45,149 nucleotides of DNA from Octopus bimaculoides. Lineage: Eukaryota. Shown one piece after another: positions 4,006 through 44,541 of this stretch (position 1 is the first letter of the stretch; every line of letters begins with the position of its first letter). Under the pieces are notes generated by a model. It saw only the letters and a program-made list of their open reading frames with translations, made no database searches and was not told the origin of the DNA. The DNA is taken from NCBI RefSeq assembly GCF_001194135.2, contig NC_068995.1, positions 37,390,761 through 37,435,909 of the forward strand, in the 5' to 3' direction. Made by a program: the position numbers and the translations under genes.

Positions 4006-4796
4006 GCATTTATAAACCAAATTAACACAATGTCTTCAAGTGAATTCAATAGTTATCAATTTCTAACATTTGAAAATTGATCTTGGTGAGATTGGAACAC
4101 AGAAACGTAAAGCACAATTTGACCAACGATCTGCCAGTTCTACTAATGAACGACTCTTGGTTTTGCTAATAATGAAAGCCACGTTCTACATAAAAAACAT
4201 CAGATCTTTTCACCACGCATTTATTATCAGCGCTTGAATGCAAATAGTTCGCAGTTTGTGTTTCCTCAATTGCCTTAAGTTGTTTACCAGAGTTATAAAA
4301 ACGATCATTAAACTATTTTCTTTACTATTTTCTTAAGCTGACAATACGAAGAAGACTGATACGTTAGATTTTATCTGAAACTCCATGGAAAAGACGTAAA
4401 ACAGACTGTTTGACAGGTGTGCGAACTAGAATGAGAAATAATTCTTTTTGGCCGTGAAACAACTTCTATAAAATCGTATTATATTGCATCTGTGCAAATA
4501 ACTCATATTTAATGCCAGGCATGAAGTAATATTTAATGTTCGACTGAGACTATGAATTCTTTCACAGACTTCACACTTCCAAAGACTTTATATTACATGA
4601 AGAGAAGGCGCTACCAACAGCCAACAATTATTGAAGATGGATATCAATTATTTTAATTATATTTATCCTGAAATGTAACTTTGGTGGCAACGGTTGGGTA
4701 AGAAAGATAACAATATTCTTCAGTAAATTTGATTAGATTACAAACTGCCAAAGTTTGATATTAAAGCAGTAGCAAAAGAAAACATATTAATGGGAC

Positions 4797-4949
4797 ATAA
4801 TAGTCGATTATATCTGGTACTTAATTTATCGACCACGAAAGAATGAAAAGCAAAGTCGATTTCAGCGGAATTTGAATTCAGCGTAAAGACGGACGAAATA
4901 CCACTAAGCATATCAACCGGCGCGCTAACGATTCTGCCAGCTCACCGCC

Positions 4950-4950
<1 letters not shown>
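4797..4950 (-). mobile_element. SINE family B copy 1 of tandem triplet
   Basis: Reverse complement begins aggcggtgagctggcagaatcgttagcgcgccgg; head abuts (TAA)n at 4951-4999. Confidence 0.85.

Positions 4951-4999
<49 letters not shown>
4951..4999. repeat. (TAA)n microsatellite spacer
   Basis: About 16 TAA units between two SINE-B copies. Confidence 0.95.
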
Positions 5000-5195: not shown

Positions 5196-5404
5196 ATTTC
5201 AAATTTTTGCCACAAGGGCGGCTTGGGGGAGGGGATAAAGTCGATTACATCGACCCCAGTGCGTGACTGGTACTTATTTAATCGACCCCGAGAAGATGAA
5301 AGTCAAAGTCGACCTCGGCGGAATTTGAACTCAGAACGTAACGACGGGCGAAATACCGCTAAGCATATCGCCGGGCGCGCTAACGAGTCTGCTAGCTCAT
5401 CGCT
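5196..5404 (-). mobile_element. SINE family B copy 3 of tandem triplet
   Basis: tttcaaatttttgccacaagg...tcgacctcggcggaatttgaactcagaacg...ctagctcatcgct; followed by TAA/CAA/TAC repeats. Confidence 0.9.
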
Positions 5405-5438
5405 TTAATAACAATAACACGACTACTACTACTACTAT

Positions 5439-5470
<32 letters not shown>

Positions 5471-5840
5471 ATAATAATAATAAGTATTATTATTGCTGGC
5501 TCTCGAATCGTACACATGTGTTTCTGTTTCGCTCCACTCGTCCATATTTACAGCATTACCAAATAAAAATATCTTTAGAGTATTTGCCTAAAAGGGTCAT
5601 AATTAACTGATTAACTAATCGGCGTAGTAAAGAAGAAAAAAGTTTGTTTTTACAGACTTAGTTTTATTTACTTAAAATTGCTGGTGACATTTTCACACTC
5701 ACAATATCTACCAGACAAAAACACGTTACAAAATCTACCACAATAGTCAACGAGGCTAAAATGACAAAAAGATATAAACAAATTGCACAAATGAAGGAGA
5801 AGAAAGAGAAAAAAAAACGAAGCTTAATGATGACATATAG

Positions 5841-6524: not shown

Positions 6525-7140
6525 CAATTATACTGTAACATGACTTTTTCCAAACAATTTCAGGTTATCTATAAACAGAAGATGGTTCAATGACGGGCCA
6601 TTCTTCCTACATCGGTAACCCATCTTAACTTTCATAAGTGTCATTATTATGGGTATTAGAGTAACTACAAATAATAACGGAGAAAACGAATCCCCTTGGA
6701 AGATGTCCCTTTTAATATTAACTTCGCAAAGGAAGACATTATTTGAGTACAATTTGGTTTTCTACTCATTCATGCTATGCATCAGAAAATTTGTGATATT
6801 GTCAGCAACACCAAGCATCTGCAGGTATTCAACGATCCAAGAAGGAGGCATTGTACCATATGCCTTCTTAAAGTCAACCAAGACATAGACATGTTTGTAT
6901 AATGTTTTTTTTTTACAATAGCTCAAAACTGTTTCATCGATGACCAGGTGATGCTTGGTACACTGAGAACTCTTCCTACATCGTTTTTGTTCCCTTGGTA
7001 GTATTTCTTCCTGTGCCAGGGAAGTATATCTCTTTGCGGCATATACTACAGTGAGTATCTTCCAGATTATGTTGAGGCATGCTATGGGACGGTAGTTTCC
7101 CACAGTATTCCCCTTTCTGCTATGATAAGGTTATATGTTT
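6525..7140 (-). mobile_element. R4/Dong-like non-LTR retrotransposon, RT-domain fragment
   Basis: GNYRPIACL, EQKRCRK, DFKKAYG, IFQGDSFSPLLFV and LLFIDNLKLFG (decayed YxDD) motifs; stops and frameshifts. Confidence 0.9.
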
Positions 7141-7143
7141 CTG

Positions 7144-7144
<1 letters not shown>

Positions 7145-7217
<73 letters not shown>
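7145..7217. repeat. (ATT)n microsatellite between two R4/Dong-like copies
   Basis: About 24 units; reads (TAA)n on the element sense strand. Confidence 0.95.
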
Positions 7218-7218
<1 letters not shown>

Positions 7219-7219
7219 A

Positions 7220-8205
7220 TACACTCGACAGATTAGACTGTTGGAAAAGAAAAGAATCCTGACATCAGGCTACAACAAGTAGAGTTAGATGTCAAGCACC
7301 CTCCTATTGGTTTATTGCAAGTAACCGCTGATACCAAGAATCCTCCTAAATATCCTAGCTGTCCATAATAACACTGTTATCTGGAGCTGTACTAAAATGG
7401 GTTTTATGCCTATTTCCTCTATCCATCTCTTCAGATCTTTAGGGATAGTTCCCAGTGCACCTATATTACTGGGATACATTTTACCCACACTTTCTACAGT
7501 CTCTGTAATGCAATGTCTAGGTTCTTGTACTTTACTATTTTTTCTATACTTCTCATATTAATTTGTTCATCATTAAAGATCGTAAAGGCAGTTAACTTGC
7601 ACTTTCTATTGTCTTTATCTACTACAACCATACCAGGCTTTCTAGTTTCTATTACTCTGTCAGTCTGAATGTTAAAGTCTCGCATCTTCTACTTCTTACT
7701 TTCTAGTACTTTACTAGGTTCATGTTCATACCATTTATTAGTATGTTCAAATCATAGCTTACTACATAGCTCTCAGTGGATTGCTCTCCCTAGATTGTCA
7801 CGTCTTGTATTCTTTCTGTGCCAGCATGCTATATTCACTTACTATATGAGTAATGATTTCCTCCTTTATCTAAATAGTCATTAATGCTTGATCTTATGCA
7901 GCTACTAGCAAACTTTCTATCTCTCTTCAGCTTTCTTTATGCAGCCATAACCATGTCTCACTACTACTGTTTGGGTATCTACCATGCAACACCTTCTCCT
8001 GCCGGTCAGATAATTTCTGTTCTTTTTTCTGGTTTTTAAGTTCGGTTGGTGTTTTGGTTTTCCCATGTTTTGCTGTGACTCTAGCAGCTTTTAATAAACT
8101 TTCTTCACTATTACTTACATAAGAGTCTATATCTACTCTAGATAACTGCACGCCGTCTTCTAGTGATATTAACCCGTCTTTCACCTTCTTTTCTGTGAAA
8201 GGTTA
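7220..8205 (-). mobile_element. R4/Dong-like retrotransposon 3' portion (thumb, RLE, 3' UTR)
   Basis: DGLISLEDGV...SEESLLKAAR, LHGRYP, DFNIQTDRVIETRKPGMVVVDKDNRKC (RLE region); 3' UTR matches 43381-43525. Confidence 0.9.
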
Positions 8206-8214
8206 GTGCAGCGA

Positions 8215-8395
8215 AGAACATGTCCAGCCGCTTACATTTGAAATCCCTCTGCCAGAGTCAACTTTGCATTCCATTTATCCGGAGACGATAAAATAAAATA
8301 CCAGTCAAGTACTATGGCTAATGTTATGGAATTCGAATAATACCCACTCCACCTTAAAACTGATGCCGTTGTGCCTAAATGAAAAACTGTTATTA
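8215..8395 (+). mobile_element. Degenerate SINE family B copy
   Basis: gagtcaactttgcattccatttatccggagacgataaaataaaataccag...gccgttgtgcctaaatgaaaa. Confidence 0.5.
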
Positions 8396-9222
8396 TTGTT
8401 TCTGTTCTTTCTTGGAGGTATGATTTACATTTGAAGACAGTTTCTTTCGTCTATTATTAGAATCATTATTCTTCTGCCACTTAATACATTCTAGAACACT
8501 TATCCGAAATTTATGTTATTTCTAAAAGGAAACCGGCTTTGGAATATCGATGCTTACTTTCATCTATATTTATTGATATCCATTTGTCTTCTTTACAGGG
8601 GAATTGGTATAATCAACTAGCTTACTTGAAATATTGCTATCGTTCAACGTTTAGTCGCCGCAATTTTCGAATTTTAGTATCTGTTTGGCGTGCAATATAG
8701 CTGATTGTTCACACATTTTTGAGCTTAAATTTCACTACTGTGTATTCCGTACTACCTACAGAGATGTGATAAAGGTGGGTTGGTAGTGTTAAGAGATACT
8801 GTCAAAAACCAATTTTCATTTCGGCTTAACTTATTGGTTATTTACACTGCGAATTGATCCAAACTGGTCCTATTATCTTGTTAGATATGTTATAGCTGTA
8901 ACTAAATTCTTACTCACACACACACGCGCGGGCATACACAAACAAACACACATATGTGTGTGGAAATATGTATATATATACATACATAAATATATATATA
9001 TATAACATAATAANNNNNNNNNNNNNNNNNNNNNNNNNNNNNNNNNNNNNNNNNNNNNNNNNNNNNNNNNNNNNNNNNNNNNNNNNNNNNNNNNNNNNNN
9101 NNNNNNNNNNNNNNNNNNNNNNNNNNNNNNNNNNNNNNNNNNNNNNNNNNNNNNNNNNNNNNNNNNNNNNNNNNNNNATATATATGTAACAATATAACAT
9201 AATAAAATAATAAAATAGATAA

Positions 9223-29697: not shown

Positions 29698-29737
<40 letters not shown>

Positions 29738-29760
29738 CATTATTATTATTATTATTATTA
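29698..29760. repeat. (TTA)n microsatellite without adjacent retroelement
   Basis: About 21 units, one interruption. Confidence 0.95.
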
Positions 29761-30434
29761 CTATTTCTTTTTTCTTTTTAGAAATAACGTAATTGGATCC
29801 GTTTTATATTTGTAGCTACAATATGACATAAAGAATTTCTGCAGCCATATGATTTATATTGGTACATTTTTACTACAATAATTTTTCTTGTTTTCAACGC
29901 ATTCACAATTTTCTCCTTCAAAGTTAGCTATTTATTTTCTTTCTCTCGCTCAGTTCCTAAAATTATTTCACTACATCATTATTTGTTGCCGTCACCAAAC
30001 ATTTTTTGTTTGTTTTTTGATTGCTCAAATGAATGAGATCATTCAACATTTGAAATTAAACAAACGATTAATCTCAAGGATACAGCTCGACTCCACCCAT
30101 TTTAGATGATGGTATGTTATTTTGGAGCAGTAAATAAATACTAAAACATTGTTTTATGGTCCACACTATTTTATTATGTAAGCTGGCGCGCTGTTACTGT
30201 GTTTTGGTGTATTTTTATATACTTAATTCAAATCCCGATAAGCCTGCCATTGCTTTATACCCAACCGAGGTCGATTGTATAAAGTACACGCTCCCCCGAA
30301 AAATTCCTAGCCTTGTACCGACATGAGAAACATTTTTTTTTTTTTATTTTGCCTCGTAAACAAATCTCTGTAAGCAAAAAACAAAATGATGGAGTGCATC
30401 TCAGTAGTGACCTGATTAAGGATATATTAATATG

Positions 30435-33349: not shown

Positions 33350-33530
33350 TTCACCTCCCCTCCTTCTCGTTTCCTCCTCCTTCTCGTTTCCTCCTTCTTC
33401 TCCTTTCCTCCTCCTTCTCCTTTCCTCCTCCTTCTCGTTTCCTCCTCCTTCTCGTTCCCTCCTCCTCCTCCTTTCCTCCTCCTCCTCCTTTCCTCCTCCT
33501 TCTCCTTTCCTCCTCCTCCTTTCCTTTTTT
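33350..33530. repeat. About 18-bp polypyrimidine minisatellite
   Basis: Unit approximately TTTCCTCCTCCTTCTC(C/G), about 9-10 degenerate copies. Confidence 0.85.
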
Positions 33531-36930: not shown

Positions 36931-37103
36931 AAAAATGTGTTCTACCACATGTTAACATCATGTTCAATTCTTTTCCATGCTTAGTTATGAGACTTTAATG
37001 CAGTTACTACCATACAAAGTTTAATGCAGCGGGAATCAGTTCTACATCTGAAACTTGAAGTCATTGAAATGTAGAGTTTATTAGTAAGCACAAATCTTTA
37101 ATT

Positions 37104-37148
37104 AGGCGTAGGCGTCGCTGTGGTTTGCTTGCCGACCACATGGTTCTG
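37104..37148 (+). mobile_element. SINE family A head fragment abutting R4/Dong-like copy
   Basis: aggcgtaggcgtcgctgtggtttgcttgccgaccacatggttctgg. Confidence 0.6.
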
Positions 37149-37149
37149 G

Positions 37150-37890
37150 TCATAAACGTAGCTTCTGCGACACATTGGACGAAACAGTAAACCATCTCGT
37201 TTCGGGATGTCCTGTGCTGATCCCAAACGAATACAAAAATCGCCAAGATAGGGTAGGACAGTATTTACATTGGATAATATGTAAACAGTACAAAATCGGC
37301 ACTCCTGCTGACTTGTATGAATATCATCCTGAGCCAGTCGTTGAAGGTATAAGTGTCACTATCTTCTGGGATTTCCCAGTCAACACCGACAGAACGATCC
37401 AGGCTAATCAGCCAGACATAATTATTAAAGATAAGGAAGAAAATACTTGTTGACTAATATATGTAAGTGTCCCCACTGATAACTATGTATCTGTAAAGGA
37501 ATTTGACAAATTAATTAAATATAAGGACCTGGAAACTGAAATACAAAAGATGTGACATCTTAAAGCAAGAATTCTTCCTGTTATTGTAGGTGCCCTAGGT
37601 ATGATAAAAAAAGTGATGTCAGAAATATCTAGACAACATCCCAGGGGAACAATGTCCCAGAGAAATCCAAATGATTGTGCTGACATGTACTGCCCACATT
37701 CTTAGTAAAACTCTGTCCATTTAAATGTCTGTGTTGTATTACGTGAAGATATTTCGCAACTGCCCTTGCTACTTCCTTTCTCCAAGCCTTCAGTCAGACT
37801 GTAACATCTCTTATCCATCACTTGCCTTAGTATACAGGGTGTGTCTCGGAAAGTGATTGTAAATAACATGCAAATTAAAAGTAAACAACC
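37150..37890 (+). mobile_element. R4/Dong-like retrotransposon 3' fragment (array unit 1)
   Basis: FCDTLDETVNHLVSGC (CCHC), WDFPVNTDRTIQANQPDIIIKDKEENTC, KYKDLETEIQKM, PVIVGALG; 3' UTR followed by (CAA)(TAA)n. Confidence 0.9.
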
Positions 37891-37919
37891 ACAGCAACAA
37901 TAATAATAATAATTAAAAA

Positions 37920-37960
37920 CTAAGGAGGGTTCTTGGCTTCTAAGTGCTTCTTGTGCATGA
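37920..37960 (+). mobile_element. R4/Dong-like micro-fragment (array unit 2)
   Basis: cta agg agg gtt ctt ggc ttc taa = LRRVLGF*, similar to the ORF end of unit 4 (ILTRVLGI); (TAA)n on both sides. Confidence 0.5.
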
Positions 37961-37971
37961 TAATAATAATG

Positions 37972-38033
<62 letters not shown>

Positions 38034-38058
38034 GTAATAATAATAATAATAATAATAA
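37961..38058. repeat. (TAA)n microsatellite within the array
   Basis: About 32 units, two interruptions. Confidence 0.95.
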
Positions 38059-38059
38059 G

Positions 38060-40953
38060 ATTGCCATGGAGAACGATAGCGACATTATTTGCAACCTTAA
38101 AAAGGTTGATCGAAGGAAAGTGAACCAAGAAACGAAAAATGCCAATGAAATTCTGAAATACATCAGAACAAAAAACATCACAGAAACATATAATTTGATC
38201 AAAGCAGCAAGAATTGTTGTAGCAGAGAACGTGGGTGTTGATGGCAAGAAAAAGAACCATAATGGAAGTGACAAAGGAAAAGATCCATGGTGGAAAAGAA
38301 GAATCCAGGCAGGATTNNNNNNNNNNNNNNNNNNNNNNNNNNNNNNNNNNNNNNNNNNNNNNNNNNNNNNNNNNNNNNNNNNNNNNNNNNNNNNNNNNNN
38401 NNNNNNNNNNNNNNNNNNNNNNNNNNNNNNNNNNNNNNNNNNNNNNNNNNNNNNNNNNNNNNNNNNNNNNNNNNNNNNNNNNNNNNNNNNNNNNNNNNNN
38501 NNNNNNNNNNNNNNNNNNNNNNNNNNNNNNNNNNNNNNNNNNNNNNNNNNNNNNNNNNNNNNNNNNNNNNNNNNNNNNNNNNNNNNNNNNNNNNNNNNNN
38601 NNNNNNNNNNNNNNNNNNNNNNNNNNNNNNNNNNNNNNNNNNNNNNNNNNNNNNNNNNNNNNNNNNNNNNNNNNNNNNNNNNNNNNNNNNNNNNNNNNNN
38701 NNNNNNNNNAAAAAAAAAAAAAAAATGAGCAACTGGAAGGCCCCGGGACTAGATGGAGTTCAAGGCTACTGGATCAAAAGATTTGGTGAATGCCATGCAC
38801 GAATAGCTGCGCAACTCCACACCTTGTTAAATGCCGACCAAGTAACACCAAAATGGTTGACATTGAGTAGGACAGTGCTATGCCTGAAAAACATCGAAAA
38901 AGGCAATACAGTATGCAATCACATGCCGATATCCTGTTTGCCACATATGTGGAAGTTATTGACTGGAATAGTTGCAGAGTCAATGTACGAACATCTACAA
39001 AAAAAGTGGATTCCTGCCACATGAGCAGAAGGGTTGCAAGCGTAAGTGAAGAGGCACCAAGGATCAACTCCTTATAGACAAAACTGTACTTAAAGACTGC
39101 AAGAGGAGGAAAAGAATCTTAGCCATGTCATGGATCAACTATCATAAGGCGTATGATATGACCCAACATTCTTGGATTATGGCGTATATGAACCTATTTG
39201 GTATTGCATGGAATATTGAGCGATTGCTTGGAAAAAGTATAGCGAATTAGAGGACGGACTTGACAGCACACCGAAGAAGTTTAGGGACAGTAGAAATTAG
39301 GAGGGGCATCTTCCAAGGTGATTGCCTGTTCCCACTAATCTTTGTACTGTGCTTGATACCACTAACACTGATTCTGAGAAAAGCAAAAGCTGGGTATGTA
39401 TTCAAAAGCCGCCAATAAAAAGTCAACCATTTGTTATTCATGGATGACCTCAAACTTTATGGTAAAGATGAAGCCCAAGTCAGTTCCCTCAGTGATACGG
39501 TGCATACCTTCAGTGTTGATATCAGAATGGAGTTCGGGTTGAGAAAGTGTAGTGTATTAGTCTTGAAGAGAGGCAATATCAAATCTATGAACGGGCTAAC
39601 GATACTATCGGGGGAGGTTATGAAAGAGATAGAAGAGACGGGCTATAATTACTTGGAGATTTTGGAAATGGATAAATTGATGGAGAAAGAAATGACAGAA
39701 AAATTTAAGGTGGAATACTTGCGCAAACTGAGACTGATCCTTAAGTCGAAATTAAACGGACGGAATAAGATCGAAGCTATCAACACCTGGGCGGTTTCAC
39801 TCCTTAGATATGGAGCAGGGGTAATCGCATGAACAGTAGACGAACTAAACGACTTAGACAGAAAGACAAGGAAGTTGCCCACTAGATATGGGTTACTCCA
39901 CCCAAAAGGTGTCACAGACAGACTGTATGTACCAAGAAAAAGAGGGGGAAGAGGACTTATTGGATGCGAACAAAGCATTAAAGCAGAAGAAAAAACATAT
40001 CATGGTATGTAAAAATGCTATAGAACTGCTATTACTAGAAGTAAGAAGTTCAGGCCTGTGTCGGATGAAAGATTACAAAGATAAAGCACTATACAAGAAA
40101 TTGAAAACGAATGGAACTGAAAATAGGTGGGTAAAGAAAAGAATGCATGGTCAATTTTATAGGGATGTTGAAGATAAGACAGACAGAGGAAAAAGATGGT
40201 TGTGGATGACTAAAAGTGATTTAAAGCTGGAAACGGAGGCTCTAATCTGTGCTGCCTAAGAGCCAGCACTAAGAACAAACTACATAAAATACAGAATAGA
40301 CAGCAACAGCAGAAAGTGATAAGTGCAGAATCTGTGGACAAAACGGTGAAACCGTATGGCATATTACCAAACATTGTACGCCGCTATCCCAGAAAGAACA
40401 TAAGAGACGCCACGACAATATAGCCAGGTTTGTCCATTGGACAATTTGCAATAAGTATGGACTTGACAGAGTAAAAAATTGGTACGACCACAAACATGAA
40501 GGTATCGTCGAAAATAGAAATGGAAAGATCTTATGGGATTTTATGATTCAGTGTAATCATGAGATAGAGAACGGTAAGTCAGACAGTCTTAACTGAGAAA
40601 GAAAACAAACTATGCTGGATCATAGATATAGCGTGCCCAGCTGACAACAACGTATGCGATAAGGAAGAAAGAAAAGTCGAGAGATATGACGGGTTAGCTT
40701 GGGAAGTTAAGAAGCTGTGGTTATTGAAAAAAGTAGTGGTAGTACCAATTATTATCAGAGCTCTAGGAACAGTGAGCAAAAATCTCGAGAATAGGGGTTG
40801 CCATAAGGGTGGAGAACTTTCAGAAAACATTACTGCTTGGAACCGCTCGGATACTCCAGAATGTGCTCGAAAAATAAGAGGAGTTACCTTAGTTCACTGA
40901 TAGTAAACAGCTGACACCGTAGTACATCTCCAGCGTTAGAAGCTGTGAAAAGG
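38060..40953 (+). mobile_element. R4/Dong-like retrotransposon, most complete copy (array unit 3), pseudogenised
   Basis: N-terminal PWWKRRI, NWKAPGLDGVQGYWIK, RGIFQGD, LFMDDLKLYG, CRICGQNGETVWHI..HC, WDFMIQCNH, IIDIACPAD; several stops and frameshifts; N-gap 38317-38709. Confidence 0.93.
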
Positions 40954-40954
40954 C

Positions 40955-41036
<82 letters not shown>

Positions 41037-41057
41037 GTAGTAGTAGTAGTAGTAGTA
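40954..41057. repeat. Compound (CAA)n(TAA)n(TAG)n microsatellite
   Basis: Read directly; separates array units 3 and 4. Confidence 0.95.
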
Positions 41058-41061
41058 ATAA

Positions 41062-42647
41062 TTACGAGAGTGAGTACAATACTGGTCATTAATAATCACT
41101 AGAGAAATGACAATACACATTTTAAAAGACAAGATTAAAGGGAAATACAGCTCGCAACTATAGACCAATTACTTGCTTACCAGTAGTGTGGAAGCAGTTA
41201 GCAGAAATGCTTTCAGAAAGCAATTACGAGCACCATGGCAACCAGAATTTACAACCAGAAGAACAGAAAGGTTGCAGGAAGAAGGCTAGAGGAAAGTATG
41301 ATCTATTATATAAAGACAAAGCAGTTCTAAATGAAGTAAAAGCTAGAAAGAAAAATCTAAAAGTAACATGGATAGATATCAAAAGAAGAATTCTCCAGGA
41401 GGACTTGTTGTCCTCTTTAATGTTTGTCTTATGTTTGACCCCCCCCCCCTCAGTTTATTATTAAAGAAGGCAAAGTCAGATTATCTATTTAGAAATAGTA
41501 AGGGGAAAATTAGCCATTTCCTCTACACGAATGATCTGAAGCTTTTTAGTAAGAATGTAAAAGAGATAGATTCCTTAATACAGACTGTAACACTTTTCAG
41601 CAAAAATAAAGGCATTGAATTTGGCATAGGTAAGTGTACAATGTTAGTCATGGGAAGGGGACAGGCACTCAACAGCAAAGGCATCCAAATACCAGATGGC
41701 CAGACATTAAAATCATTGAAAAGCGGAGAGAGTTATAAGTATCTAGGAGTATTAGAATCTGACTGAGTACTAACTACGGAAATGAAAACGAAAATTGAGA
41801 AGAGGAAGAGTGAGGAAGTTAATTAAATCAAAGCTAAATGGTCCGAATTTAGTGAAGTCTGTAAATACCTTGGCAGTATCATTACTTAGATACTCAGCAG
41901 CTTTTGTAGACTGAACAAAAACTGAATTAGCAAAGCTAGACAGAAGAACTAGGAAGGAATTCAATATGAAAAGAGAACTCCACTCAAGAGTAGGAGTAGC
42001 AAGATAATATCTACGTAGAAAGGAAGGCAGAAGGGGGTTAGTATCAGTAGAAGACTGTGTGGAGTTCGTTAGAGTAGATATAGACTCCTATGTAGGTAAT
42101 ATTAAAAGAAAGTTTATTAAAAGCTGCTAGAGTCACAGCAAGAACAGGGAAACCAAAAACCCAAACGAAGTTTAAAACTGGAAAGTAGATCTGAAATCAT
42201 GTGACTGGCATGGTAGATTCCCAAAGGTAGTTTCAGCAAATAGTATTAGTGAGACGTAGTTATGGTTGCAGAAAGGAAAGCTGATGAAGGAGACAGAAAG
42301 TTTGCTAGTACTGCACAAGATCAAGCACTAAGAACTAATTGGATAAAGTTGGCCAAGATAGACAAACACCCTAGTAGATTCCCAATGTTGATTATGCAAA
42401 CAAAAAGAGGAAAGTGTTAGTCATATAGCAAGCGAATGTAGCACGCTGGCACAGAAAGAATACAAGAAAAGACGTGACAATCTAGGGAGTGCAATCCTTT
42501 GGGAGCTATTAAGAAAGCTAGGATTTGAACATACTGATCAATGGTATGATTATGAACCTAATAAATTACTAGAAAGTAAGAAATACAAGATACTGTGTGA
42601 TTTTAACACTCAGAATGATAGCGTAATAGAAACTAGAAGGCCTGATT

Positions 42648-42713
<66 letters not shown>

Positions 42714-43525
42714 ATAAAAAGAACAGAAAGTGCCAGATAATTGACTTTAGAGTTCCAAACGATGAAAAATTTATGAGAGAGAAAACATAGTAAAGTATCA
42801 GGATCTAGTTATTGAATTACAGAGACTATGAAAAGTGCGTCTAAAATGTATCCCAGTAGTTATAGGCGCATTGGGAAGATCTGAAATAAGTATAACACCC
42901 AGTTTAGTACAGTTGCAGTAAATAGTGTTATTAGGCGCAGGAGTGCCTGTGCGGTAAGTAGCTTGCTTACCGACCACATGGTTCCGGGTTCAGTCCCACT
43001 GCGTGGCACCTTGGGCAAGTGTCTTCTGCTATAGTCTCGGGTCGACCAAAACCTTGTAAGTGGATTTNNNNNNNNNNACCTTGGGCAAGTGTCTTCTGCT
43101 ATAGTCTCGGGTCGACCAAAACCTTGTAAGTGGATTTGGTAGACGGAAACTGAAAGAAGCCCGTCGTATATATGTACATATATATGTGTGTGTGTTTGAC
43201 AACCGATGCTGGTATGTTTACGTTCCCGTAACTTAGCGGTTCAGCAAAAAGAGACCGATAAAATAAGTACTAGGCTTACAAATATTAAGTCCTGGGGTCG
43301 ATTTTCTCGACTAAAAGCGGTGCTGCAGCATGGCCGCAGTCAAATGACTGAAACAAGTAAAAGAGCAAAAGTGTAAAGAGAGAAAGCTAGGATACTTACG
43401 AGGGTTCTTGGCATCTGCGGTTACTTGCTGTAACCCAATAGGGGGGTTCTGGACATCTGCGTCTATTTATTGTAGCCCGATGTTAGGATTCTTTTCTTTT
43501 CTAACAGTCTAATCTGTTGAGTGTA
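41062..43525 (+). mobile_element. R4/Dong-like retrotransposon (array unit 4), 5'-truncated, internally deleted, interrupted by SINE-A
   Basis: NYRPITCLP, EEQKGCRK, FLYTNDLKLFSKN, YKYLGVLE, RPDL(V)nDKKNRKCQIIDF; 3' UTR ends gtctaatctgttgagtgta before (AAT)n at 43532-43552. Confidence 0.92.
42933..43380 (+). mobile_element. SINE family A nested in R4/Dong-like unit 4
   Basis: Full head and tail; the sister R4 copy (7220-8205) is uninterrupted at this point. Confidence 0.92.
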
Positions 43526-44541
43526 TATGAAAATAATAATAATAATAATAAATTGCAGCGGTCCTTTATGCCCCGTAAAAGAACTCGGAAGGCTGGGCCT
43601 TCAGTCAGGCCTTTCGCAATACTATTAAAACGAACTTTTCAACACCCCTTCGTGTATAATATCGGGAAAATATTTTGTGTACATGAAGGCGTTATTAAAT
43701 ATTTAGGGAAAGATCATATACAGATGCTGAAATTGTCTGCAAGTAGCAGGTGTTTAAGCAAAGATGATTACAAAAATAACAATCCTACAAATTTAGCAAC
43801 GATGTGAATGACGTATTGTTAATATCTGTCTCCTATATCTGTTTACTTGTTACTCATAAATTTGATATCGCATTGAATTCTGACTGTTGGAGAATACGCA
43901 CACGTATATGTAGATCAGTTTTCTGCAGGTATATAAAAGTGTCCTACTATTTACATAAAATATCTTGTCATTTATTTTCAATAAATATATTCGTTCATTA
44001 CTATAGGTACACAACTATAATCTAAAATCTACAAATATTTTTGTAGGTCTTTGTTAACTCTTTAATAAGAGTATGTATGTTAAAAACAAGTTTCTATTCA
44101 ATTAGTATCTACATTTAAAAATAAGAAATCATCATTTTTCATTCCAATAGTACATCAACGTATTTCTACACGTGCAGTGGTGCCTGCAACAATCAGATAG
44201 ATTTCATGCATTATTTTCCTTATTATCGATAATGTTCTACATCATTATTCACTTCTTATTTCGCTGCAGCAAATCCCTTAATATATGCAGACTAGCAAGC
44301 CATACTGAACTGGGGAAACCATTATGGAATCGATGTTGCATGGACACGGCTAATAATGAACTGTGACATCATGGCTGACGTGAATGTGGAGAGAGGTCAT
44401 ACAATTGTCGTGACTTTGATTTCACCAATAAATTTTGAGTAGAAAACCGCATAAAATCTAGAGAGTAATGATGTGGCAATCATACTTGGACAATTTTGTT
44501 TGTTTTGCCCTTGTTTTATTCATTATTACAATACAGTTACG

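What the first reader, a model, noticed from the sequence alone, without database searches (positions are those of the whole stretch)
37150..43552. Head-to-tail array of four R4/Dong-like retrotransposon units, every junction a (TAA)n tract
Seen: four same-strand units (37150-37890, 37920-37960, 38060-40953, 41062-43525), each followed by TAA-based repeats, forming about 6.4 kb of nearly contiguous RLE-retrotransposon DNA. Units 1, 3 and 4 have different 3' UTRs and diverged RLE domains, so they are distinct subfamilies rather than a tandem duplication. Established: R4-clade elements encode a restriction-like endonuclease, and Dong of Bombyx inserts into (TAA)n. Inference: each insertion leaves TAA repeats on both sides and so regenerates the target, making this a microsatellite landing pad reused by several lineages over time.
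Basis: partly seen in the sequence, partly recalled or inferred. Interest (0 to 1): 0.75.

Follow-up and report, generated by a model that had tools for sequence, protein, structure and literature searches.

The report
Dong-type retrotransposons stacked in TAA repeats
This is a pile-up of dead copies of a known jumping gene (Dong/R4-type LINE) that inserts only into TAA repeats; each copy leaves TAA on both sides, so later copies land next to it, which is real but ordinary.

Summary
On the + strand, 37151-43551 carries three clear, 5'-truncated, decayed RT/CCHC/restriction-like-endonuclease LINE copies (U1, U3, U4). A probable 47-bp fourth copy (U2) sits between U1 and U3. All are co-oriented and joined only by TAA-based microsatellite. 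U1, U3 and U4 share no detectable nucleotide similarity, so this is not a tandem duplication.

A second array of the same kind lies on the minus strand at 6540-8195. Eleven of eleven 5' junctions, and eleven of eleven 3' junctions followed by a clean tract, lie at (TAA)n in relatives from other assemblies. Three of those nine loci are arrays too.

Upstream TAA at truncated 5' ends shows that TAA is the target, not only a tail.

The 393-N gap interrupts one collinear element. The 10-N gap is an unresolved 60-bp overlap inside a SINE that inserted into U4.

Single-copy unitigs from three individuals confirm the outer boundaries. The long internal microsatellite joints could not be checked with reads.

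TAA-specific Dong elements are published for molluscs, and Dong-R4 is annotated as abundant in octopus. This is therefore a correct reading of a known system, and interest is low.

The parts
37105..37150 (+). 46-bp 5' head of the abundant octopus SINE, fused to the truncated 5' end of U1. This is the left edge of the array and is not a TAA tract.
   Evidence: It aligns by eye to the head of the SINE inside U4. A 322-nt unitig with 0 mismatches covers 36935-37220 at single-copy depth in three individuals.
37151..37889 (+). U1: a 5'-truncated copy carrying the CCHC knuckle, the RLE domain and the 3'UTR. It has 3 stops and the catalytic D is changed to Y.
   Evidence: tblastn 37163-37606 against residues 960-1108, E 4e-34. 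Translation. The family is high copy.
37890..37913 (+). Tail/target tract CAACAA(TAA)4-5 between U1 and U2.
37914..37960 (+). U2: a probable extremely 5'-truncated copy holding the last ~7 codons (LRRVLGF*) and a short 3'UTR.
   Evidence: The best non-self matches in the window are the ORF ends of U4 and UA. Depth is single copy. The evidence is weak.
37960..38058 (+). (ATA/TAA)33 tract joining U2 to U3.
   Evidence: TRF.
38059..40953 (+). U3: a copy lacking about the first 195 codons and the 5'UTR. It carries RT, CCHC and RLE and is interrupted by the 393-N gap (38317-38709). It has more than 8 stops, several frameshifts and a small deletion in the PD motif near 40571-40585.
   Evidence: Family reads extend 5' of 38068 and into the gap. 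U3 has 141 private substitutions in 2225 bp.
40954..41062 (+). Composite tract (CAA)13(TAA)~17(TAG)7 joining U3 to U4.
   Evidence: TRF. The family consensus tail is ..GGCAA(TAA)n.
41063..43531 (+). U4: a copy truncated within RT (from about residue 460), with internal deletions. It contains a (TAG)22 expansion at 42648-42713 and a SINE insertion at 42930-43395 that holds the 10-N pseudo-gap. Its 3'UTR is 43396-43531.
   Evidence: Unitigs span the SINE/U4 junctions.
43532..43551 (+). (TAA)6 tract at the right edge, followed by unique DNA.
   Evidence: TRF. A 1.5-kb single-copy unitig covers 43522-43720 in four runs.
7218..8195 (-). UA: a 5'-truncated copy of the U4 subfamily (76% nt identity). 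Its 5' flank is the head of an old inverted tRNA-type SINE.
   Evidence: The boundary is covered by unitigs of 790-1012 nt: perfect (0 mismatches) over 8105/8110-8480 in two runs, 18 mismatches over 7992-8480 in the other two, single-copy depth in all four.
7145..7217 (-). (TAA)24 tract joining UA to UB.
   Evidence: TRF, (reported as TTA on the + strand). Sequence.
6540..7144 (-). UB: the RT part (about residues 460-676) of a further lineage. It starts directly after the TAA tract and has lost its 3' part.
   Evidence: tblastn E 3e-46. No nucleotide similarity to U3 or U4.

Best explanation
These are dead, 5'-truncated copies of at least four lineages of a single-ORF LINE. The element encodes reverse transcriptase, a CCHC knuckle and a C-terminal restriction-like endonuclease. 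In octopus this type is annotated as Dong-R4.

Inferred mechanism, by analogy with R2. The endonuclease nicks a (TAA)n tract in one fixed orientation. The element RNA ends in UAA repeats and is reverse-transcribed from the nick. Reverse transcription often stops early, which gives 5' truncation.

Because the insertion splits the tract, TAA repeats remain on both sides. The 3' side is renewed by the tail and by slippage. The locus therefore stays a target, and later insertions of any TAA-specific lineage stack head to tail in the same orientation.

Shown here: the anatomy, the co-orientation, the TAA tracts at truncated 5' ends, the independence of the lineages, and the same pattern in other species. 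Inferred: the nicking and priming steps, and the order of insertions.
For: Domain content and decay.

Relatives: 953 relatives were found. The full-length ones are ~1125-1146 aa, each a single ORF.

Relation to R2: a profile of the family hits R2 structures at E 4.6e-40, with the CCHC/RLE block aligned at i-E 0.003.

Junctions in the window: six units lie in two arrays. Four of six 5' ends and five of six 3' ends are at TAA tracts, which cover only ~0.8% of the window.

Junctions in relatives (L001-L009): 11 of 11 readable 5' junctions are at (TAA)n, as are 11 of 12 readable 3' junctions. The twelfth, a short unit of a distant lineage in L006, has only a degenerate TAA-like stretch. Five of the 5' junctions belong to truncated copies. 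L002, L003 and L006 are themselves head-to-tail arrays of different lineages.

Orientation: every unit is co-oriented with TAA on its sense strand.

Genome-wide 3' ends: 1237 and 1354 reads continue ..GGCAATAATAATAA after the U3 3' end.

Lineages: there is no nucleotide similarity among U1, U3, U4 and UB.

Age: private divergence from the family majority is 6.3% for U3 and 7.8% for U4. A SINE inserted into U4 afterwards.

Boundaries: single-copy unitigs confirm the outer boundaries in three individuals.

Literature: Dong targets (TAA)n in insects, molluscs and cnidarians (PMC7998251, PMC3812793). Dong-R4 has 1129 recent insertions in O. vulgaris (PMC13282606). Among molluscs, R4-Dong is found almost only in cephalopods (PMC10294476).
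Against: U1 and UA, the first unit of each window array, have no TAA at their 5' junction. U1 abuts a SINE head and UA abuts an inverted SINE. Either the upstream part of the tract was lost or 5' joining was non-canonical.

UB lacks a 3' end.

The two long internal joints (99 and 109 bp of microsatellite) come from a gappy short-read assembly and could not be checked. The read tool refuses TAA tracts and unitigs break there.

No biochemical evidence exists here for the cleavage specificity.

The clade assignment was not tested by phylogeny.
Confidence: 0.85

Rival explanations
1. The elements insert without sequence specificity and merely carry an intrinsic (TAA)n tail. Arrays arise because the UAA tail of a new RNA anneals to the tail of a resident copy. 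The specificity would then come from tail capture, not from the endonuclease.
For: U1 and UA have non-TAA 5' flanks, as expected for a founder that landed in ordinary DNA. Every copy does end in TAA.
Against: Full-length and truncated relatives that are not preceded by another element still have (TAA)17-46 directly upstream and unique DNA beyond it (L001, L004, L007, L008). All 11 readable 5' junctions in relatives are at TAA. The window also holds TAA tracts with no element, so free targets exist (29698-29765).
Confidence: 0.07
2. The array is partly an assembly artefact. Contigs that end in TAA repeats were joined wrongly through the microsatellite, so the units are real but are not neighbours.
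For: The window has 13 gaps. One of them is flanked by a spurious 60-bp duplicate. All families are high copy. The 99-bp and 109-bp joints could not be verified.
Against: Single-copy unitigs shared by three individuals confirm both outer boundaries, the SINE junctions and the UA boundary. The U1-U2 joint is short. The same architecture recurs in the window on the other strand and in long contigs of other species (L002, L003, L006).
Confidence: 0.06
3. The array arose by tandem or segmental duplication of one element, for example by unequal crossing-over between TAA tracts.
For: The units are head to tail on the same strand and separated by the same repeat.
Against: There is no blastn similarity among U1, U3 and U4 over the shared C-terminal region and 3'UTR. 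Protein identity is only 31-35%. The truncation points differ.
Confidence: 0.01
4. The mechanism is the same, but the elements belong to the HERO clade of RLE LINEs rather than to R4/Dong. Some HERO families are reported to be microsatellite-specific.
For: No tree with reference Dong, R4 or HERO sequences could be made. PMC4640811 notes HERO families with microsatellite targets. Octopus also has a few Hero copies (PMC13282606).
Against: Published octopus annotation gives Dong-R4 as the abundant family (1129 recent insertions, ~4.2 kb each) and Hero only 13 (PMC13282606). The TAA target and the absence of N-terminal zinc fingers match the R4/Dong description in PMC7998251.
Confidence: 0.1

Closest known systems
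Dong (Bombyx mori) and Dong-like elements (DongAg, DongBg of the snail Biomphalaria), R4 clade of RLE-encoding non-LTR retrotransposons
   Same: Both have a single ORF with RT, a CCHC knuckle and a C-terminal restriction-like endonuclease, and no N-terminal zinc finger. Both insert in (TAA)n with TAA on both sides. 5' truncation is frequent (PMC7998251, PMC3812793).
   Different: The window copies are all dead and truncated. An HDV-like 5' ribozyme, shown for Dong, was not detected with Rfam in relatives. Clade membership was not tested by phylogeny here.
Octopus Dong-R4 families (O. bimaculoides repeat library; O. vulgaris curated annotation)
   Same: Same host group, same kind of element and high copy number. 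The literature reports 5 families with 1129 recent ~4.2-kb insertions (PMC13282606) and a full-length Dong consensus in O. bimaculoides (PMC9115989). Here, depth indicates hundreds to thousands of copies with a 5'-to-3' gradient.
   Different: Those papers do not describe target tracts or arrays.
R2 (28S rDNA-specific RLE LINE; solved structures 9nl3, 9dou, 8gh6)
   Same: R2 is the closest solved relative. The RT matches at E 4.6e-40, and the CCHC, RH(D/N), PD, D and EK..KY motifs of the endonuclease align. Both are site-specific for a repeated target, and target-primed reverse transcription is the likely mechanism.
   Different: R2 has a different target (rDNA) and has N-terminal zinc-finger/Myb domains. 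This family instead has a conserved W..W..W helical domain with a single invariant Cys.
Other repeat-targeting LINEs that pile up in their target arrays (R1/R2 in rDNA, Utopia in U2 genes, Waldo/Mino/Kibi/Koshi in microsatellites)
   Same: Here too the target is itself repeated, so several insertions share one locus. Utopia is reported as occasionally inserted in tandem (PMC4640811).
   Different: Here the target is regenerated at both ends of every insertion, and several unrelated lineages share one tract.

Membership tests
RLE-encoding non-LTR retrotransposons (R2 group) | Reverse transcriptase of the non-LTR type | tested here: met
   Pfam RVT_1 hits U3 (E 5.5e-13) and U4 (E 3.9e-06, 27.1 bits, below Pfam's 29.6-bit cutoff); full-length relatives E 1e-23 to 1e-27. 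The best PDB hits are R2 proteins.
RLE-encoding non-LTR retrotransposons (R2 group) | A C-terminal CCHC knuckle followed by a PD..(D/E)xK restriction-like endonuclease, and no N-terminal APE endonuclease | tested here: met
   The invariant residues C945, C948, H957, C962, R973, H974, D975, P1030, D1031, D1046, K1058 and K1062 are present in 27 relatives. This block aligns to the R2 RLE at i-E 0.003. The motifs are visible, though partly mutated, in U1, U3, U4 and UA.
R4/Dong clade | Insertion into (TAA)n with target repeats on both sides (the Dong branch) | tested here: met
   In the window, four of six 5' ends and five of six 3' ends are at TAA tracts. In relatives, 11/11 readable 5' ends and 11/12 readable 3' ends are at clean TAA tracts; the twelfth 3' end has a degenerate TAA-like stretch. 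Truncated copies are included.
R4/Dong clade | The RT domain groups with Dong/R4/Rex6 references in a phylogeny | not testable with these tools
   No reference Dong, R4, Rex6 or HERO protein sequences could be retrieved, because database hits carry no clade names. The assignment rests on published RepeatMasker-type annotation of octopus (PMC13282606, PMC9115989, PMC10294476).
R4/Dong clade | An N-terminal divergent Myb/SANT-like domain without zinc fingers (PMC7998251) | tested here: inconclusive
   Relatives have a conserved N-terminal block with W45, W81 and W106 and only one invariant Cys, so there is no zinc finger. The model has 4 helices and pLDDT 82. Foldseek against the PDB gives nothing below E 0.4, and Pfam gives nothing. 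The window copies all lack this region.
R4/Dong clade | An HDV-like self-cleaving ribozyme at the 5' end (shown for Dong and R4, PMC3774820) | tested here: inconclusive
   Rfam scans at E<=10 of the 5' ends of L001, L004 and L008 gave no HDV-like match. Such ribozymes are poorly captured by sequence models. No window copy keeps a 5' end.
Tandem/segmental duplication | The units are similar to each other at nucleotide level | tested here: not met
   There are no blastn hits among U1, U3, U4 and UB. Only U4 and UA, on different strands 34 kb apart, are 76% identical.

The most novel reading that the evidence does not exclude
The arrays may be more than graveyards. Placing different lineages head to tail on one strand would allow read-through transcripts and reverse-transcriptase template switching, and so exchange of modules between lineages and with SINEs.

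Two hints were seen. First, a ~70-nt block just upstream of the start codon is shared by subfamilies whose proteins are only ~55-60% identical (L003, L004, L006). Second, U1's truncated 5' end is fused, in the same orientation, to exactly the first ~46 nt of a SINE. That is the structure expected from a jump from Dong RNA onto SINE RNA.
Probability: 0.1. Interest if true: 0.45.

Novelty: already known. Interest (0 to 1): 0.15.

Why it matters
It matters little beyond annotation. The locus is a clean textbook example of how a microsatellite-specific LINE keeps its own landing site alive, so that several lineages share one safe harbour away from genes.

Practical consequences:
- TAA tracts in cephalopod assemblies are likely to be flanked by Dong copies.
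- These tracts are likely places for assembly breaks or mis-joins.
- TAA microsatellite markers in octopus will often sit in repeated flanks.

Tried and rejected
Later calls therefore had to stop at the tracts, and the 99-bp and 109-bp joints remain unverified.

Logan unitigs are too short in these high-copy families to show contiguity inside the units.

Rfam scans for an HDV-like ribozyme at the 5' ends of three relatives found nothing meaningful. L008 instead starts with a perfect 41-bp hairpin. I did not attempt a hand-made ribozyme descriptor, because five sequences give no power.

The N-terminal domain gave no match with Pfam at E<=10. An AlphaFold model followed by Foldseek against the PDB also gave nothing.

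The listing of cluster members gave no informative names (only 'hypothetical protein') and no organism names or accessions for the nearest relatives, so neither species nor clade labels could be attached.

Looking for more Dong pieces beyond the array edges at E<=10 found nothing.

UB and U4 begin at nearly the same residue (~460), so I tested whether they are the same lineage. They are not.

The Xiong & Eickbush 1993 and Biedler 2015 papers are not held.

I found no paper in the held library that describes multi-lineage Dong arrays.
Full report
**What is there.** The window is AT-rich (36.5% GC), has 13 assembly gaps and is full of SINE copies. Its reads come from one organism that was sequenced in several studies.

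Within 37151-43551, three-frame translation and tblastn with full-length relatives show three same-strand, decayed copies of one kind of element.
- U1 (37151-37889) holds only the CCHC knuckle, the endonuclease domain and a 3'UTR.
- U3 (38059-40953) starts about 195 codons into the ORF and runs to the 3' end, across the 393-N gap.
- U4 (41063-43531) starts within the reverse transcriptase.

All three carry stops and frameshifts. U4 also has internal deletions relative to its family. It has a (TAG)22 expansion of three Val codons in the endonuclease region. It also holds a SINE insertion at 42930-43395.

Between U1 and U3 lies a 47-bp piece, U2 (37914-37960). Its best non-self matches in the whole window are the ORF ends of U4 and of the minus-strand copy UA, and it reads LRRVLGF*, the family's conserved C-terminus. 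It is single copy. I call it a probable, extremely truncated copy.

The only DNA between units is microsatellite. It reads CAACAA(TAA)4-5, then (ATA)33, then (CAA)13(TAA)~17(TAG)7, and finally (TAA)6 before unique DNA.

**The gaps.** For 38317-38709, the left flank aligns to residues 201-272 of relative P0004 and the right flank to residues 425 onward, on the same strand. About 143-145 residues (~430 nt) are missing, against 393 N.

Reads of the same family continue into the gap from both sides with the expected coding sequence. They read ..LDMLSKEIS.. after 38313 and ..VREVKEIS before 38718. So one element is interrupted. Whether the frame is kept cannot be known.

For 43068-43077, the 60 bp before and after the Ns are identical. 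After collapsing them, the SINE aligns end to end with other copies in the window. This is an unresolved overlap, not missing sequence, and it lies in the inserted SINE.

**What kind of element.** A search with stitched U3 found 953 relatives. The full-length ones are single ORFs of ~1125-1146 aa. Pfam sees only RVT_1 and a weak zf-RVT match.

A profile of 27 relatives hits solved R2 retrotransposon proteins at E 4.6e-40. Its C-terminal block (CxxC..H..C, RHD, PD, D, EK..KY) aligns with the R2 restriction-like endonuclease at i-E 0.003. L1 ORF2 proteins score far lower.

There is no N-terminal zinc finger. Instead there is a conserved block with three spaced tryptophans that models as four helices but matches nothing in the PDB.

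The literature describes exactly this type as R4/Dong. [quoted passage not shown]

In octopus, Dong-R4 is annotated as one of the most active LINE groups, with 1129 recent insertions of ~4.2 kb (PMC13282606). A full-length Dong consensus exists for O. bimaculoides (PMC9115989). Among molluscs, R4-Dong is almost confined to cephalopods (PMC10294476). I could not make the RT tree that would prove the clade, because no reference sequences were retrievable.

**Is TAA the target or only a tail?** The key point is the 5' end of truncated copies. A truncated cDNA cannot bring upstream sequence with it, so TAA directly upstream must be target.

In the window this holds for U2, U3 and U4. It also holds for UB, in a second array that I found on the minus strand. 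That array reads UA (8195->7218, U4 subfamily, 76% identical), then (TAA)24, then UB (7144->6540, another lineage).

In nine loci fetched around relatives from other assemblies, all 11 readable 5' junctions sit at (TAA)n, and 11 of 12 readable 3' junctions are followed directly by a clean (TAA)n tract.
- Four solitary full-length copies have unique DNA beyond the tracts: L001 (TAA)17/(TAA)10, L004 21/11, L007 28/19 and L008 46/35.
- Three loci are head-to-tail arrays of different lineages: L002, L003 and L006.
- Two distant, doubtfully related RT copies in L002 and L004 (28-41% identity) have no TAA.
- One short unit in L006 has only a degenerate TAA-like stretch.

For the U3 family in this genome, 1237 and 1354 sampled reads continue ..GGCAATAATAATAA past the 3' end. 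Every unit has TAA, not TTA, on its sense strand.

TAA tracts cover about 0.8% of the window, so the association is not chance.

**Independence and time.** U1, U3, U4 and UB give no blastn hit against each other. Their C-terminal domains are 31-35% identical. They are separate lineages and not duplicates.

Against the majority base of their own families, U3 has 141 private substitutions in 2225 bp (6.3%) and U4 has 124 in 1583 bp (7.8%). U4 was later hit by a SINE. All copies are old, and the order of arrival cannot be read from the structure.

Read depth shows hundreds to thousands of family copies, rising four- to seven-fold towards the 3' end. That gradient is typical of 5' truncation.

**Exceptions.** The first unit of each window array has no TAA upstream. 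U1 is fused to the first ~46 nt of a SINE in the same orientation, and UA abuts the head of an inverted old SINE.

Both junctions are real. Unitigs cover 36935-37220 (0 mismatches) and the UA boundary: 8105/8110-8480 with 0 mismatches in two runs, 7992-8480 with 18 mismatches in the other two. All are at single-copy depth, in three individuals.

Loss of the upstream part of the tract at insertion would explain both. For U1, a template switch onto SINE RNA is another possibility. These cases leave a small chance for the rival in which founders land anywhere and only later copies use the tail.

**Reliability of the assembly.** The right edge (U4 end, (TAA)6, unique DNA) is confirmed by single-copy unitigs, and so are both SINE/U4 junctions. 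The long internal microsatellite joints could not be tested. The read tool refuses TAA tracts and unitigs end there. I therefore keep a small probability that some neighbours were mis-joined. The recurrence of the same architecture elsewhere argues against that.

**Verdict.** The system is already known: TAA-specific Dong-type LINEs, including in molluscs and octopus. That several lineages stack in one tract follows directly from a target that survives each insertion, and comparable pile-ups are known for other repeat-targeting LINEs. Interest is low.

Noticed in passing
window 6540-8195 (minus strand): A second head-to-tail Dong-type array: UA (U4 subfamily), then (TAA)24, then UB (another lineage). 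It was not part of the finding.
   Followed up: yes
window 37105-37150: The first ~46 nt of the abundant SINE are fused, in the same orientation, to U1's truncated 5' end. Single-copy unitigs confirm this in three individuals. The structure fits a template switch of the reverse transcriptase onto SINE RNA.
   Followed up: partly
window 42930-43395, gap 43068-43077: A SINE inserted into U4's C-terminal region. The 10-N gap inside it is flanked by an exact 60-bp duplicate, which is an unmerged contig overlap.
   Followed up: yes
window 42648-42713: A (TAG)22 microsatellite grew out of the GTAGTAGTA (Val-Val-Val) codons right after the PD motif of U4's endonuclease. The sister copy UA still has the short form.
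   Followed up: partly
window 4790-4998 and 5200-5483: Two copies of a tRNA-like SINE each have a TTA/TAG-type microsatellite directly at their head ((TAA)16 at 4951-4998; (TAG)16(TAA)5 at 5422-5483). The SINE leader may seed tracts that are Dong targets on the opposite strand.
   Followed up: no
window 29698-29765: A (TTA)22 tract with no Dong remnant on either side. It is an apparently unoccupied target.
   Followed up: partly
L003 2709-3000, L004 2715-3000, L006 2831-3000, L003 6840-6900: A ~70-nt block just upstream of the start codon (GGGACTCTTTAGTCTTGG..GATGGTGTC.CGATAAAAACAC) is shared by subfamilies whose proteins are only ~55-60% identical. Two independent full-length copies (L003, L004) both have exactly (TAA)21 upstream.
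   Followed up: no
L008 8523-8610: The 5'UTR of a relative begins, right after (TAA)46, with a near-perfect 41-bp GC-rich hairpin (-101 kcal/mol, z -11.6). It could be functional or could be a fold-back artefact of a 9x contig.
   Followed up: partly
window 37965-37986: The word depth of pure (TAA)n is 1.5-2.8 million, against about 14-58 for single-copy DNA. TAA repeats are therefore extremely abundant in this genome.
   Followed up: no
window 33359-33517: A 17-bp minisatellite (CCTCCTTCTCCTTTCCT) x9.4 with 93% matches.
   Followed up: no
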